DNA from: Macrostomum lignano
Lineage: Eukaryota
Reading direction: 5' to 3'
Length of the DNA stretch: 64,000 nucleotides
NCBI GenBank assembly: GCA_002269645.1
Contig: NIVC01000269.1
Location: 1-64,000 of the forward strand
Position 1 is the stretch's first letter. Each line of letters begins with the position of its first letter. A model generated the notes under the pieces. That model was not told the DNA's origin. It searched no databases and worked only from the letters and a program-made list of their open reading frames with translations. Positions 18,701-24,700 of the stretch are shown here, piece by piece. Made by a program: the position numbers and the translations under genes.

Positions 18701-21700
18701 GATAGATAGATAGATAGATAGATAGATAGATAGATAGATAGATAGATAGATAGATAGATATTCATAAGGCAGTTTGAAACTGCAAACCACGCACTCGGAA
18801 GATATTGAAGGTTACCAGTTGTCGAATGTTCGAAAAAAACCGATATTTCGGCCCAGACTGGGCCTTCGTCAGGGTTTATTTATTCGGGTTTAAAAACAAA
18901 TATATTGGCAGTGAAGTTATTGTAACATAATTTCAATAAATATATATGCGACTTTTGGGGGTGCACTGAGCAGTGTTGAGTAAAGATGTGTACGCATAAT
19001 TAGTTAAAAACGTGAGTTGAAGCACGCTGATTGGTTAAAGATTGGCAGCTTAAAGCCTTGCACAAAAAATATTAAAGATGTTAGGTGCTATAGAAAAACA
19101 GATTTAGAGCGTAGAAGTGTATGAATAAGCATCTTGAAAAGTTCAACAAATAAGTTATTTACGCCCGTAGAATTGAGAACAAATATTAAATTAAAACAGA
19201 GCACTGAGAACTTTGAGAACTGAGAAAATTGAGTCGCCAGGCAGGCCACTAGTTGCAGTTGGCGGCGTCTGGTCACAGATCGCCGCCTGCACAGCCCCTG
19301 GTCACAGGCGACTGGGCACTGCGGATCAGTTGAAGCTAGATTATCAGTAGTAGTAGCACTAGTAGTTGCAGTAGTAGCTCGTAGTAGTAGTAATGGAAGT
19401 AGTAGTAGTACAAGTATTAGTAGAGTAGTAGTAGAGCAGTCGTAGGCGTAGTCGTAGTAGAGACGTACTGGTAAGCAGTTATTTGAAGTAGCCAGGCAGG
19501 CCACTAGTCGCAGTTGGCGGCGTCTGGTCACAGATCGCCGCCTGCACAGCCCCTGGTCACAGGCGACTGGGCACTGCGGATCAGTTGAAGCTAGATTATC
19601 AGTAGTAGTAGCACTAGTAGTTGCAGTAGTAGCTCGTAGTAGTAGTAATGGAAGTAGTAGTAGTACAAGTATTAGTAGAGTAGTAGTAGAGCAGTCGTAG
19701 GCGTAGTCGTAGTAGAGACGTACTGGTAAGCAGTTATTTGAAGTAGCCAGGCAGGCCACTAGTCGCAGTTGGCGGCGTCTGGTCACAGATCGCCGCCTGC
19801 ACAGCCCCTGGTCACAGGCGACTGGGCACTGCAGATCAGTTGAGGCTAGATTATCAGTAGTAGTAGCACTAGTAGTTGCAGTAGTAGCTCGTAGTAGTAG
19901 TAATGGAAGTAGTAGTAGTAAAAGTATTAGTAGAGTAGTAGTAGAGCAGTCGTAGGCGTAGTCGTAGTAGAGACGTACTGGTAAGCAGTTATTTGAAGTA
20001 GCCAGGCAGGCCACTAGTCGCAGTTGGCGGCGTCTGGTCACAGATCGCCGCCTGCACAGCCCCTGGTCACAGGCGACTGGGCACTGCGGATCAGTTGAAG
20101 CTAGATTTTCAGTAGTAGTAGCACTAGTAGTTGCAGTAGTAGTAGTAGTGGTAGTAGAGTAGTAGTAGTACAGTCGTAGTCGTAGCCGTAGTCGTAGTAG
20201 TGTCGTGCGTCTTAAATATTCAGCTGCAGAAATAGTACTCTTGCTTATCCCAAGTAGATTTTTGGCGGAGAATAGCTCGTATACGAAGATATTTTGTTGA
20301 CAAACATGGCGAGCCTCAATAATAGTCCGGTCCTGGGTACAGATATTCATAAGGCAGTTTGAAACTGCAAACCACGCACTCGGAAGATATTGAAGGTTAC
20401 CAGTTGTCGAATGTTCGAAAAAAACCGATATTTCGGCCCAGACTGGGCCTTCGTCAGGGTTTATTTATTCGGGTTTAAAAACAAATATATTGGCAGTGAA
20501 GTTATTGTAACATAATTTCAATATATATATATGCGACTTTTGGGGGTGCACTGAGCAGTGTTGAGTAAAGATGTGTACGCATAATTAGATAGATAGATAG
20601 ATAGATAGATAGATAGATAGATAGATAGATAGATAGATAGATAGATAGATAGATAGATAGATAGATAGATAGATAGATAGATAGATAGATAGATAGATAG
20701 ATAGATAGATAGATAGATAGATAGATAGATAGATAGATAGATAGATAGATAGATAGATAGATAGATAGATAGATAGATAGATAGATAGATAGATAGATAG
20801 ATAGATAGATAGATAGATAGATAGATAGATAGATAGATAGATAGATAGATAGATAGATAGATAGATAGATAGATAGATAGATAGATAGATAGATAGATAG
20901 ATAGATAGATAGATAGATAGATAGATAGATAGATAGATAGATAGATAGATAGATAGATAGATAGATAGATAGATAGATAGATAGATAGATAGATAGATAG
21001 ATAGATAGATAGATAGATAGATAGATAGATAGATAGATAGATAGATAGATAGATAGATAGATAGATAGATAGATAGATAGATAGATAGATAGATAGATAG
21101 ATAGATAGATAGATAGATAGATAGATAGATAGATAGATAGATAGATAGATAGATAGATAGATAGATAGATAGATAGATAGATAGATAGATAGATAGATAG
21201 ATAGATAGATAGATAGATAGATAGATAGATAGATAGATAGATAGATAGATAGATAGATAGATAGATAGATAGATAGATAGATAGATAGATAGATAGATAG
21301 ATAGATAGATAGATAGATATTCATAAGGCAGTTTGAAACTGCAAACCACGCACTCGGAAGATATTGAAGGTTACCAGTTGTCGAATGTTCGAAAAAAACC
21401 GATATTTCGGCCCAGACTGGGCCTTCGTCAGGGTTTATTTATTCGGGTTTAAAAACAAATATATTGGCAGTGAAGTTATTGTAACATAATTTCAATAAAT
21501 ATATATGCGACTTTTGGGGGTGCACTGAGCAGTGTTGAGTAAAGATGTGTACGCATAATTAGTTAAAAACGTGAGTTGAAGCACGCTGATTGGTTAAAGA
21601 TTGGCAGCTTAAAGCCTTGCACAAAAAATATTAAAGATGTTAGGTGCTATAGAAAAACAGATTTAGAGCGTAGAAGTGTATGAATAAGCATCTTGAAAAG

Positions 21701-24700
21701 TTCAACAAATAAGTTATTTACGCCCGTAGAATTGAGAACAAATATTAAATTAAAACAGAGCACTGAGAACTTTGAGAACTGAGAAAATTGAGTCGCCAGG
21801 CAGGCCACTAGTTGCAGTTGGCGGCGTCTGGTCACAGATCGCCGCCTGCACAGCCCCTGGTCACAGGCGACTGGGCACTGCGGATCAGTTGAAGCTAGAT
21901 TATCAGTAGTAGTAGCACTAGTAGTTGCAGTAGTAGCTCGTAGTAGTAGTAATGGAAGTAGTAGTAGTACAAGTATTAGTAGAGTAGTAGTAGAGCAGTC
22001 GTAGGCGTAGTCGTAGTAGAGACGTACTGGTAAGCAGTTATTTGAAGTAGCCAGGCAGGCCACTAGTCGCAGTTGGCGGCGTCTGGTCACAGATCGCCGC
22101 CTGCACAGCCCCTGGTCACAGGCGACTGGGCACTGCAGATCAGTTGAGGCTAGATTATCAGTAGTAGTAGCACTAGTAGTTGCAGTAGTAGCTCGTAGTA
22201 GTAGTAATGGAAGTAGTAGTAGTAAAAGTATTAGTAGAGTAGTAGTAGAGCAGTCGTAGGCGTAGTCGTAGTAGAGACGTACTGGTAAGCAGTTATTTGA
22301 AGTAGCCAGGCAGGCCACTAGTCGCAGTTGGCGGCGTCTGGTCACAGATCGCCGCCTGCACAGCCCCTGGTCACAGGCGACTGGGCACTGCGGATCAGTT
22401 GAAGCTAGATTTTCAGTAGTAGTAGCACTAGTAGTTGCAGTAGTAGTAGTAGTGGTAGTAGAGTAGTAGTAGTACAGTCGTAGTCGTAGCCGTAGTCGTA
22501 GTAGTGTCGTGCGTCTTAAATATTCAGCTGCAGAAATAGTACTCTTGCTTATCCCAAGTAGATTTTTGGCGGAGAATAGCTCGTATACGAAGATATTTTG
22601 TTGACAAACATGGCGAGCCTCAATAATAGTCCGGTCCTGGGTACAGATATTCATAAGGCAGTTTGAAACTGCAAACCACGCACTCGGAAGATATTGAAGG
22701 TTACCAGTTGTCGAATGTTCGAAAAAAACCGATATTTCGGCCCAGACTGGGCCTTCGTCAGGGTTTATTTATTCGGGTTTAAAAACAAATATATTGGCAG
22801 TGAAGTTATTGTAACATAATTTCAATATATATATATGCGACTTTTGGGGGTGCACTGAGCAGTGTTGAGTAAAGATGTGTACGCATAATTAGATAGATAG
22901 ATAGATAGATAGATAGATAGATAGATAGATAGATAGATAGATAGATAGATAGATAGATAGATAGATAGATAGATAGATAGATAGATAGATAGATAGATAG
23001 ATAGATAGATAGATAGATAGATAGATAGATAGATAGATAGATAGATAGATAGATAGATAGATAGATAGATAGATAGATAGATAGATAGATAGATAGATAG
23101 ATAGATAGATAGATAGATAGATAGATAGATAGATAGATAGATAGATAGATAGATAGATAGATAGATAGATAGATAGATAGATAGATAGATAGATAGATAG
23201 ATAGATAGATAGATAGATAGATAGATAGATAGATAGATAGATAGATAGATAGATAGATAGATAGATAGATAGATAGATAGATAGATAGATAGATAGATAG
23301 ATAGATAGATAGATAGATAGATAGATAGATAGATAGATAGATAGATAGATAGATAGATAGATAGATAGATAGATAGATAGATAGATAGATAGATAGATAG
23401 ATAGATAGATAGATAGATAGATAGATAGATAGATAGATAGATAGATAGATAGATCGCATTTTATTCCAGATGGGAATTCACTGAAAAGTTACGAGTAGTT
23501 GCACCCGAACTCCCAAATCAGTGAGGTTATAATTTTTCCCTACTAGGATGGCAGCGAGGCCGTCGGCCTCCCATTTAGTTCATTAATATTTATGGAAAAA
23601 GTTAAGGAATTTCACCCCGAAGTGGGGAATTATAGCTACTGTCTTTCTCTCTATCAAATTTTCCGAAGGCAAAGTCTCCCGGCATATTCGTGCTCAAATT
23701 GCATTTTAAATCTGGCAGTTTTTATCATAAACCGGCTTCTAGTTCAGTTTTAATTGGCAGTGGGTTAATGAAAAAGACTTAAAATACGAGCTTACCATAT
23801 CAGATTTTTTTATTTATTAAGCTAAGTGAATAAACCGAAAAAAAGTTGTATAATTTTTTCAAACATGGAGACGATTTTTTTATTAAAGGCAAAATAATTC
23901 CTATTCCCGTTTTTAATTTGAACAGGCCAAAGAGGTAAGGGTTCAAGAATTTAATTTTTATTCATCATTTTTCATTCTTTTTCTAATAATGGGATTTATG
24001 CTTTTATATTTAATTAATCGCCTGTTGTTGTGCATGAACGATTTGATAAATTGCTACATGAAGCTATGCTATAATGCTTAAATTATCGATTTTTTGTTTA
24101 TCTGCTGAATTTTGTTTTAACGGTAAAATGATATTTAAAACAGAATGTCCCGTATGTTGTATTTTGTTTCTTTCATAAGTTTTTATGGTGTTTCTTTTTC
24201 CAACTGCTCTTCATTTTGTTTAAACTAGCCGATGATTTTATATTTGAATTCTAGATTTTGCCGTAGCTTTTCTAAATATACTGCTTTTGGTAGAATAATA
24301 GATTGTTTTTTAAAAAAGTCAAACTTCAAATTTTATATTTCAGCACCCGGACTCCAAGCGTAAAATTTGTATAGATTATGATTGAACAAGAGGTAAAACT
24401 ACAGTACCACAGGTATATTGTAGAACTAATTGCAATGATATACCTTCGAACTGAGCTTAACTTTCGAATATCCGAGGGTCAACTTTTTATACCACATTTT
24501 TAATTACTTATAGTTAATACCGTACGATTAATTGTGACTAAAAATTTTCGCATATCAAAATTTGAATAAAGTTGTTTTACTGAAATGATAAACTTTGGAT
24601 CTCTATCTGACATCTGAAACGAATTTCTGATATCCATCTGACAGTAGAATATCTTCATTAATATTCATGTACATTTAACTCCAAGAATATATTATTGATG

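What the first reader, a model, noticed from the sequence alone, without database searches (positions are those of the whole stretch)
18761..22892. Hammerhead-ribozyme-flanked non-autonomous element (four identical ribozymes) in a host intron
Seen: two elements, each with ~243-bp direct terminal repeats. Every repeat carries on the minus strand CUGACGA-helix II-GAA-AUAU-C with a flanking helix I. Predicted cleavage is after 18842, 20427, 21401 and 22731, releasing monomers of 1585 and 1330 nt. No RT is encoded. Known: Penelope-like elements carry minimal type I hammerheads with palindromic helix III that are thought to cleave as dimers, and retrozymes yield circular RNAs from such repeats. Inference: a retrozyme-like parasite of a Penelope element, larger than the few-hundred-nt animal retrozymes I know of. 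It is antisense to the host gene, so it would not cut the host pre-mRNA.
Basis: partly seen in the sequence, partly recalled or inferred. Interest (0 to 1): 0.75.

Follow-up and report, generated by a model that had tools for sequence, protein, structure and literature searches.

The report
ORF-less Penelope-type element with hammerhead repeats
A small non-coding retrotransposon of the Penelope type, carrying a minimal hammerhead ribozyme motif in each terminal repeat, sits in a (GATA)n microsatellite inside an intron of an RBMS-like gene and was then duplicated locally; it is a new example of a known kind.

Summary
Two copies (18756-20588 and 21315-22892) each have 243-248 bp direct terminal repeats. 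Each repeat carries, on the minus strand, CUGACGA-A-GGCCCA/GUC/UGGGCC-GAA-AUAU-C with a 5-bp helix I. A descriptor scan found only these four sites in the window and none in 200 shuffles. The motif has the features published for minimal hammerheads in Penelope-like element (PLE) pseudo-LTRs: an extra base between positions 9 and 10.1, a G10.1-C11.1 pair, a palindromic 15.2-16.2 and an open helix I. Rfam finds nothing.

No RT or GIY-YIG domain is encoded in the element or in the open frames scanned elsewhere in the window.

The intron and antisense claims hold: the host is an RBMS-like gene on the plus strand, intron 17869-25843.

Corrections:
- The two copies are identical apart from one 255-bp minisatellite unit and share the same left/right repeat difference. 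They are one insertion duplicated at DNA level, or an assembly artefact, so there is one independent ribozyme, not four.
- The large size comes from an internal minisatellite; the unique core is about 0.6 kb.
- It fits a non-autonomous PLE derivative better than a classical animal retrozyme.

Cleavage, circular RNA and an autonomous partner could not be tested.

The parts
18756..20588 (-). Element copy E1: upstream pLTR + 1585-nt unit (sense strand taken as the hammerhead strand)
21315..22892 (-). Element copy E2: identical to E1 except for one missing 255-bp minisatellite unit (unit 1330 nt)
   Evidence: two ungapped blocks, 0 mismatches
18756..19003 (-). E1 downstream pseudo-LTR (3' end of the unit); its last 5 nt (AGATA on +) are shared with the microsatellite
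20341..20588 (-). E1 upstream pseudo-LTR (partial tandem copy of the unit's 3' end)
21315..21562 (-). E2 downstream pseudo-LTR
22645..22892 (-). E2 upstream pseudo-LTR
18837..18877 (-). Minimal type I hammerhead motif (helix I AAACC/GGUUU, core, helix II); C17 at 18842, predicted cut between 18842 and 18841
20422..20462 (-). Same hammerhead motif; C17 at 20427
21396..21436 (-). Same hammerhead motif; C17 at 21401
22726..22766 (-). Same hammerhead motif; C17 at 22731
19232..20172 (.). Internal 255-bp minisatellite, 3.7 units (GC-rich hairpin part plus (GTA)n-like part); accounts for most of the element's length
21791..22474 (.). Same minisatellite in E2, 2.7 units
17877..18760 (.). (GATA)n array left of E1; it begins 8 nt after the intron's first base
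20586..21319 (.). (GATA)n array between E1 and E2
22890..23454 (.). (GATA)n array right of E2
17762..17868 (+). Host exon (RBMS-like, end of RRM1: G-YGFIDF...ISFAK), followed by donor GTGAGT at 17869
25844..26100 (+). Start of the next host exon ([15 protein letters not shown]..., RRM2); acceptor AG at 25842-25843; 3' end of the exon not determined

Best explanation
This is a non-autonomous (ORF-less) retroelement of the Penelope-like element (PLE) type.

Structure. Its unit is 1585 nt on the minus strand, from 20340 down to 18756. The unit is preceded by a partial tandem copy of its own last 248 nt, which produces the two pseudo-LTRs. Each pseudo-LTR carries a minimal type I hammerhead of the PLE class.

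Insertion. The element went into a (GATA)n microsatellite in an intron of an RBMS-like host gene, antisense to that gene. Insertion was probably by target-primed reverse transcription, carried out by a PLE RT/GIY-YIG enzyme supplied in trans. Both junctions show microhomology with the microsatellite.

Duplication. The block of microsatellite plus element was later duplicated at the DNA level, by unequal exchange between the flanking GATA arrays. One minisatellite unit was then gained or lost. Alternatively the duplication is a mis-assembly of two alleles placed in tandem.

Ribozyme. As proposed for PLEs, the hammerheads would process element transcripts. They would act only weakly, and only when two copies pair through the AUAU helix III.

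Shown versus inferred. Shown here: the repeat structure, the motif and its fold, the lack of coding capacity, the intron position and strand, and the identity of the two copies. Inferred: mobilisation by a PLE enzyme, self-cleavage, and any circular RNA.
For: Motif:
- It occurs exactly four times on the minus strand, with 0 expected by chance.
- It is the only descriptor hit in the window, with 0 hits in 200 shuffles.
- The minimum-energy fold gives helices I and II with an open core.

Match to published PLE minimal hammerheads. The motif has all four features that Cervera and de la Pena list as emerging for PLE minimal hammerheads beyond their search descriptor. [quoted passage not shown]

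Architecture:
- The terminal repeats are of the PLE pseudo-LTR kind, a partial tandem copy. They have no TG..CA termini, no TGG-initiated primer-binding site and no polypurine tract next to the repeats (read).
- PLEs are known for partial tandems, microsatellite insertion bias and non-autonomous derivatives that form pseudo-LTRs (PMC8557442).
- Microhomology at the junctions: the unit ends ..GAAUAUCU against (GATA)n, and the other junction shares TAG.
- No RT or GIY-YIG domain was found in the element or in the window scans.

Duplication. E1 and E2 show 0 mismatches apart from a clean 255-bp indel, and both carry the same single left/right repeat difference.

Other animals. The same motif class, with different but still pairing helix I sequences, occurs in animal DNA found in metagenome contigs.
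Against: - No Rfam hammerhead model matches, even at E<=10. These models represent canonical hammerheads, so this counts only weakly against.
- No second, independent copy and no autonomous PLE sharing the repeat could be found, so mobility and family status are unproven. The window holds only these copies, and the host genome is absent from the searchable collections.
- Helix III of a dimer would be four A-U pairs, and the paired motifs lie 1.3-1.6 kb apart. PLE minimal hammerheads cleave poorly in vitro (PMC4209133), so activity may be negligible.
- No 5'-truncated or inverted partner copy and no 30-40 bp 'tail' typical of PLE insertions is seen.
- The A/U-rich helix I flanks (AAUAAAUAAA ... 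GGUUUUUUU) could equally be a poly(A) signal with a downstream U-rich element.
Confidence: 0.7

Rival explanations
1. A true retrozyme. Minus-strand transcripts would be cut at both hammerheads, ligated by a host tRNA ligase into 1.3-1.6 kb circular RNAs, and these circles would be the transposition intermediate, copied beyond unit length by a PLE RT. This overlaps with the best explanation and differs only in claiming a circular RNA life cycle.
For: - There are two hammerheads in direct orientation per element.
- The insertion is about 1.16 units long. Copying around a circle for more than one unit would produce exactly this, as Cervera and de la Pena proposed for PLE tandems.
- The predicted cut site lies 86 nt inside the unit's 3' end. 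A cleaved linear RNA therefore could not by itself regenerate the observed ends.
- It meets the operational criterion of the 2026 preprint, at least two consecutive units each with a complete hammerhead.
Against: - The motif is the minimal PLE variant, not the canonical loop-bearing type I hammerhead of animal retrozymes.
- The monomer is 3-8 times longer than the 170-400 nt circles reported.
- The predicted RNA is only 48% paired, with z about -2.7 from 12 shuffles, mostly from minisatellite hairpins. The unique part has z of -0.5. Retrozyme circles are described as highly self-paired.
- There is no expression evidence.
Confidence: 0.15
2. A one-off dead remnant. An autonomous PLE copy lost its ORF by internal deletion and was filled by minisatellite expansion. 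It never moved as a non-autonomous family, and its hammerheads are inherited relics.
For: - Only one independent insertion is visible.
- The interior is dominated by a minisatellite.
- No partner PLE was detected in the window.
Against: - The left and right repeats differ at only 1 of 243 bases and all hammerhead core positions are intact. This points to a young insertion rather than an old, decayed one.
- The unique interior (about 145 + 228 nt) shows no reading-frame remnant.
- Non-autonomous PLE derivatives with pseudo-LTRs are documented.
Confidence: 0.1
3. Not a ribozyme at all: a chance hammerhead-like string inside a locally duplicated repeat or satellite.
For: - The four copies are effectively one independent occurrence.
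- There is no Rfam hit.
- Relaxed minimal descriptors yield many genomic hits, some of them spurious, as the authors themselves note.
Against: - There were 0 descriptor hits in 200 shuffles of 64 kb on both strands.
- The motif shows the unforced PLE-specific features.
- It sits in both terminal repeats of an element that also has the PLE-like architecture and target preference.
Confidence: 0.05

Closest known systems
Minimal type I hammerheads in the pseudo-LTRs of metazoan Penelope-like elements (Cervera and de la Pena 2014, PMC4209133)
   Same: Same core and open type I topology. Same unpaired nucleotide between A9 and G10.1, G10.1-C11.1 pair and long helix II (6 bp). Same short helix I (5 bp) and near-absent, palindromic helix III (AUAU), which implies action as a dimer. 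Same location in both direct terminal repeats.
   Different: No RT/GIY-YIG ORF lies between the repeats. The spacing is 1.3-1.6 kb rather than about 3 kb. The sequence outside the motif is unrelated to any example I could retrieve.
Non-autonomous PLE derivatives that form pseudo-LTRs (e.g. non-autonomous Chlamys families such as MRC1; Craig et al. 2021, PMC8557442)
   Same: ORF-less. Pseudo-LTRs formed by partial head-to-tail copies. Length inflated by internal tandem repeats. Insertion into microsatellites, so that target duplications cannot be read.
   Different: Those examples are from green algae, and most Chlamys elements lack canonical hammerheads. Here the host is an animal and the hammerhead is present. 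Similarity of the 3' end to an autonomous partner could not be tested.
Animal non-LTR retrozymes (Cervera and de la Pena 2020, PMC7229834; Li, Clavereau and Pollet 2026 preprint, 10.64898/2026.07.22.740005)
   Same: Non-coding. Type I hammerheads repeated in direct orientation. A proposed dependence on PLE enzymes. The preprint argues that retrozymes derive from PLE pseudo-LTRs.
   Different: Retrozymes are short tandem arrays (monomers 170-400 nt; family consensus sequences 51-972 bp). They mostly carry canonical hammerheads and give highly paired circular RNAs. This element is a 1.16-unit structure of 1.3-1.6 kb with a minimal hammerhead and a weakly paired predicted RNA.
Plant LTR retrozymes (Cervera et al. 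2016, PMC4918200)
   Same: Hammerheads in both terminal direct repeats of a non-coding element of comparable size.
   Different: The plant elements have type III hammerheads, a primer-binding site, a polypurine tract, 4-bp target duplications and Gypsy-type LTR ancestry. None of these is seen here.

Membership tests
Hammerhead ribozyme, minimal type I (PLE class) | Catalytic core C3-U4-G5-A6-N7-G8-A9 ... G12-A13-A14, A15.1/U16.1, H17 | tested here: met
   CUGACGA ... GAA-A-UA-U-C read directly; exact in all four copies
Hammerhead ribozyme, minimal type I (PLE class) | Helix II closed by G10.1-C11.1, and helix I formed by the flanks (open, type I) | tested here: met
   GGCCCA/UGGGCC (6 bp, loop GUC) and AAACC/GGUUU (5 bp, extendable to 9 with one U-U) appear in the minimum-energy fold and in the descriptor scan
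Hammerhead ribozyme, minimal type I (PLE class) | [quoted passage not shown] | tested here: met
   Extra A after A9; AUAU before C17; criteria taken from PMC4209133
Hammerhead ribozyme (Rfam families) | Match to an Rfam hammerhead covariance model | tested here: not met
   No hit at gathering score in the window. No hammerhead hit at E<=10 in 18700-19100.
Hammerhead ribozyme | Self-cleavage 3' of C17 | not testable with these tools
   Needs in vitro transcription or mapping of RNA ends
Hammerhead ribozyme | Compensatory changes among related copies | tested here: inconclusive
   All four copies are identical. In animal DNA from metagenomes the same motif class has different helix I sequences that still pair (AACAA/UUGUU, AAUUCA/UGAAUU, UACCA/UGGUA, ACAAC/GUUGU). 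However, I selected those by pattern and by pairing.
Penelope-like element (autonomous) | ORF with RT and GIY-YIG endonuclease | tested here: not met
   The only long frame in the element is low-complexity. No RVT or GIY-YIG Pfam hit in the frames scanned: selected ORFs in the first 8 kb, and high-complexity open frames of 70 aa or more from 8000-64000 outside tandem repeats.
Penelope-like element (architecture, including non-autonomous derivatives) | Pseudo-LTRs formed by a partial tandem copy, without LTR-retrotransposon hallmarks | tested here: met
   The 248-bp upstream repeat equals the last 248 nt of the unit. Termini are not TG..CA, and no primer-binding site or polypurine tract adjoins the repeats (read).
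Penelope-like element (architecture, including non-autonomous derivatives) | Hammerhead inside the pseudo-LTRs | tested here: met
   The core starts at nt 132 and C17 is nt 162 of each 248-nt repeat
Penelope-like element (architecture, including non-autonomous derivatives) | Insertion bias for microsatellites | tested here: met
   Both ends abut (GATA)n, with microhomology. The bias is described in PMC8557442. This rests on one insertion only.
Penelope-like element (architecture, including non-autonomous derivatives) | 3' end shared with an autonomous PLE of the same genome | not testable with these tools
   The host genome is not in any searchable collection
Animal non-LTR retrozyme | Short tandem monomers (about 170-400 nt; family consensus sequences up to 972 bp), from dimers to long arrays | tested here: not met
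   Units of 1585 and 1330 nt, about 1.16 units per copy; size ranges
Animal non-LTR retrozyme | Highly self-paired monomer RNA | tested here: not met
   48% of bases are paired in the minimum-energy fold of the 1330-nt monomer. The unique 390-nt part has z of -0.5.
Animal non-LTR retrozyme | Expressed circular RNA | not testable with these tools
   No transcript data available
Plant LTR retrozyme | Type III hammerhead, primer-binding site, polypurine tract, 4-bp target duplication | tested here: not met
   The topology is type I. There is no primer-binding site or polypurine tract by direct reading. A target duplication cannot be read in a microsatellite.

The most novel reading that the evidence does not exclude
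The element could be a link between autonomous PLEs and the short animal retrozymes. It would be a kilobase-sized, pseudo-LTR-bearing, ORF-less PLE derivative whose minimal hammerheads release a 1.3-1.6 kb RNA. That RNA would be circularised and then copied beyond unit length into microsatellites, with the start point set by the AUAUCU/(GATA)n microhomology. This would give a concrete model for how PLE pseudo-LTRs arise.
Probability: 0.12. Interest if true: 0.55.

Novelty: new member of a known kind. Interest (0 to 1): 0.3.

Why it matters
It adds one clean, young example to a class that is still poorly understood: hammerhead-bearing PLE pseudo-LTRs and their non-coding derivatives. Three features make it a convenient test case for the proposal that circular RNAs template the more-than-unit-length copies typical of PLEs:
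- the junction microhomology with the microsatellite;
- the 1.16-unit structure;
- a predicted cut site that does not coincide with the element's ends.

On present evidence it does not change what is known. The idea that such elements parasitise PLEs is already in the literature.

Tried and rejected
- Rfam at gathering score over the whole window, and at E<=10 over one repeat: no hammerhead hit.
- Exact look-up of the element's 420 aa and 335 aa frames and of the neighbouring polB ORF in public assemblies, to find the host or other copies: nothing.
- Exact motif scan of viral contigs: nothing.
- Degenerate motif scan of metagenome contigs: 74 loci. Some are animal DNA with the same hammerhead class and others are unrelated bacterial or phage-type hammerheads. 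None is similar to the element outside the motif; the only BLAST hits were to (GTA)n low-complexity sequence.
- Pfam scans of selected ORFs in the first 8 kb, and of high-complexity open frames of 70 aa or more from 8000-64000 outside tandem repeats, looking for a PLE RT or GIY-YIG domain: none found. The scans did find a Polinton-like region, a GPCR, a TTLL gene, a GT92 gene and a Mos1-type HTH.
- Host identification through a TTLL exon: the best relatives are only 47-50% identical, so the species and its close kin are not in the collection. I therefore did not spend a further protein search on the element's low-complexity frame.
- tRNA-like (SINE-type) head: none.
- The 420-aa minus-strand frame as a real protein: rejected. 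It is Thr/Leu/Tyr/Arg low-complexity that follows the minisatellite, and its only Pfam match is a sub-threshold hit to a glue protein.
- LTR-retrotransposon reading: rejected for lack of TG..CA termini, a primer-binding site and a polypurine tract.
- Viroid-like compact fold: not supported.

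
Full report
**What is in the sequence**

The region 17877-23454 reads (GATA)n - E1 - (GATA)n - E2 - (GATA)n.
- E1 spans 18756-20588 and E2 spans 21315-22892.
- Each begins and ends with the same 243-bp direct repeat, or 248 bp if the AGATA shared with the microsatellite is counted.
- Within each copy the left and right repeats differ at one base: A at 18939/21498 and T at 20524/22828.
- Between the repeats lie about 230 nt of unique sequence, a 255-bp minisatellite (3.7 units in E1, 2.7 in E2) and about 145 nt of unique sequence.

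**The hammerhead motif**

On the minus strand every repeat reads AAAUAAACC-CUGACGA-A-GGCCCA-GUC-UGGGCC-GAA-AUAU-C-GGUUUUUUU.
- The 31-nt core string occurs exactly four times in the window, against 0 expected by chance.
- I wrote a descriptor for minimal type I hammerheads: helix I of at least 4 bp, CUGANGA, 0-1 unpaired base, helix II of at least 4 bp closed by G-C, GAA, A-palindrome-U, then H. It found these four sites and nothing else on either strand, and nothing in 200 dinucleotide shuffles of the window.
- The minimum-energy fold of the isolated 49- and 61-nt segments is the hammerhead secondary structure. Helix I is AAACC/GGUUU, helix II is GGCCCA/UGGGCC with loop GUC, and the core is left open.
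- C17 lies at 18842, 20427, 21401 and 22731.
- Rfam reports no hammerhead at gathering score, nor at E<=10 on a 401-base stretch.

I give the Rfam result little weight. The motif lacks a helix III and a loop 1, and minimal hammerheads of this kind were originally found with descriptors, not covariance models.

**Which kind of hammerhead**

[quoted passage not shown] They list traits that emerged without being part of their search descriptor:
- a conserved G10.1-C11.1 pair;
- palindromic positions 15.2-16.2;
- a long helix II and a short helix I with no defined loop 1.

The motif here has all of them. The same paper reports that such motifs are inactive as single copies and only weakly active as dimers in vitro. 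In this element the dimer helix III would be four A-U pairs, formed between motifs 1.3-1.6 kb apart.

**Related sequences elsewhere**

- An exact scan of viral contigs found nothing.
- A degenerate scan of metagenome contigs (CTGANGANGGCCC-N3-7-GGGCCGAAANNTC) gave 74 loci.
- In twenty motif occurrences (19 loci) helix I pairs directly across the cleavage site, and these fall into about five families with different helix I sequences that still pair: AACAA/UUGUU, AAUUCA/UGAAUU, UACCA/UGGUA, ACAAC/GUUGU and UACAA/UUGU.
- Long frames on two of these contigs encode animal-type proteins, one with an IgGFc-binding domain and one with FN3/DSCAM-like domains. These contigs are therefore animal DNA.
- None resembles the element outside the motif.

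This shows the motif class recurs in animal genomes. It is not independent proof for this locus, because I selected the hits by pattern and by pairing.

**Coding capacity**

- The only long frame in the element (420 aa in E1, 335 aa in E2, minus strand) runs through the (CTA)n-rich minisatellite and is low-complexity. Its sole Pfam match is below threshold.
- Pfam scans of selected ORFs in the first 8 kb, and of the high-complexity open frames of 70 aa or more from 8000-64000 outside tandem repeats, found no reverse transcriptase or GIY-YIG domain.
- ARAGORN found no tRNA-like head.

**Host context**

On the plus strand an exon ends at 15146 with donor GTGAGT. A second exon runs 17762-17868, also with donor GTGAGT. 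A third begins at 25844 after an AG acceptor. Spliced together they encode ...NLYIRGL...CKG-YGFIDF...[20 protein letters not shown].... The best match among solved structures is human RBMS1 (6m75, E = 2.9e-19), aligned across both junctions, and Pfam finds an RRM domain.

Both element copies therefore lie in the 7,975-bp intron 17869-25843 of an RBMS-like gene. The hammerhead strand is antisense to that gene. No hammerhead motif exists on the plus strand, so the inference that the host pre-mRNA would not be cut is sound in silico.

The host species could not be identified:
- exact look-ups of window ORFs failed;
- a TTLL exon finds relatives of only 47-50% identity, and the best named one is the leech Helobdella at 41%.

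**One insertion, not two**

E1 and E2 align without a single mismatch apart from one clean 255-bp unit. Both carry the same left/right repeat difference. Retrotransposition that builds pseudo-LTRs copies both repeats from one template region, so a new insertion should start with identical repeats. A shared difference therefore means the whole block was copied as DNA. Unequal exchange between the two GATA arrays flanking a single element gives exactly the array-E-array-E-array layout seen here.

An assembly artefact cannot be excluded without reads. It would arise if two alleles differing by one minisatellite unit were laid in tandem. Either way, the 'four identical ribozymes' amount to one independent observation.

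**How it most likely works**

Taking the hammerhead strand as sense, the unit runs from 20340 to 18756 (1585 nt). It is preceded by a copy of its own last 248 nt. This is the PLE pseudo-LTR arrangement. PLEs are also known for microsatellite insertion bias and for non-autonomous derivatives that still form pseudo-LTRs, some lengthened by internal tandem repeats (PMC8557442).
- The unit's 3' end (..GAAUAUCU) shares five bases with the (GATA)n target, and the other junction shares TAG. Both fit target-primed reverse transcription with microhomology at each end.
- There are no LTR-retrotransposon hallmarks. The termini are not TG..CA, and no primer-binding site or polypurine tract adjoins the repeats.
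- The predicted cut site lies 86 nt inside the unit's 3' end. A cleaved linear RNA therefore could not recreate the observed ends.

That last point is compatible with the published proposal that cleaved PLE RNAs are circularised and copied for more than one unit. It is equally compatible with the hammerhead playing no part in templating.

The predicted 1330-nt RNA is only 48% paired (z about -2.7 from 12 shuffles), and its unique part is unremarkable at z of -0.5. It does not look like the compact circles of animal retrozymes.

**Comparison and novelty**

Animal retrozymes are short tandem repeats. Their circular RNAs are about 170-400 nt and their family consensus sequences are 51-972 bp. They carry canonical type I hammerheads. 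The minimal variants belong to PLEs. A 2026 preprint already argues that animal retrozymes derive from PLE pseudo-LTRs.

The element is longer than known retrozymes only because of its minisatellite; the unique core is about 0.6 kb. I therefore file it as an ORF-less PLE-type element and a new member of a known kind. The retrozyme life cycle remains an untested possibility.

Noticed in passing
window 1-8000: Part of a Polinton/Maverick-like element, cut by the window start. ORF 4288-7746 (-) has a protein-primed type B DNA polymerase domain plus an Endonuclease VII domain. ORF 363-875 (+) has an adenovirus-type cysteine protease domain. ORF 3094-3705 (+) has two TATA-binding-protein repeats, an unusual neighbour for such an element.
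   Followed up: no
window 18873-18886 and 18833-18841 (minus strand), and the equivalent sites in the other three repeats: The 5' strand of helix I is AAUAAAUAAA and the 3' strand is GGUUUUUUU. Together they could also act as a poly(A) signal with a U-rich downstream element placed around the hammerhead.
   Followed up: no
window 18935-18940 and 21494-21499 (+): The single base that distinguishes the left from the right repeats creates AATAAA on the host-sense strand, in the left repeats only.
   Followed up: no
window 14621-15146, 17762-17868, 25844 onward (+): RBMS-like (RNA-binding motif, single-stranded-interacting) gene. Its intron starts to run into a 0.9-kb (GATA)n array 8 nt after the donor site.
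   Followed up: partly
L065:107-138(-) and 619-650(+); L073; other metagenome loci: Animal genomic fragments in metagenome contigs carry the same minimal hammerhead class. L065 has two copies on opposite strands next to an ORF with an IgGFc-binding domain.
   Followed up: partly
whole window: Unusually dense in micro- and minisatellites (43 TRF rows). Examples are a 42-bp repeat x49.5 at 58074-60153 and further (TATC)n arrays at 12882-13003 and 13998-14229 that carry no insertion.
   Followed up: no
window 32415-34167 (-), 50782-52584 (-), 60240-60875 (+), about 13445-13804 (+), 41700-41990 (-): Other coding pieces: a rhodopsin-type GPCR split over two frames, TTLL (tubulin-tyrosine-ligase-like) exons, a glycosyltransferase family 92 exon, a Mos1-type transposase HTH remnant and an Ig I-set exon.
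   Followed up: no
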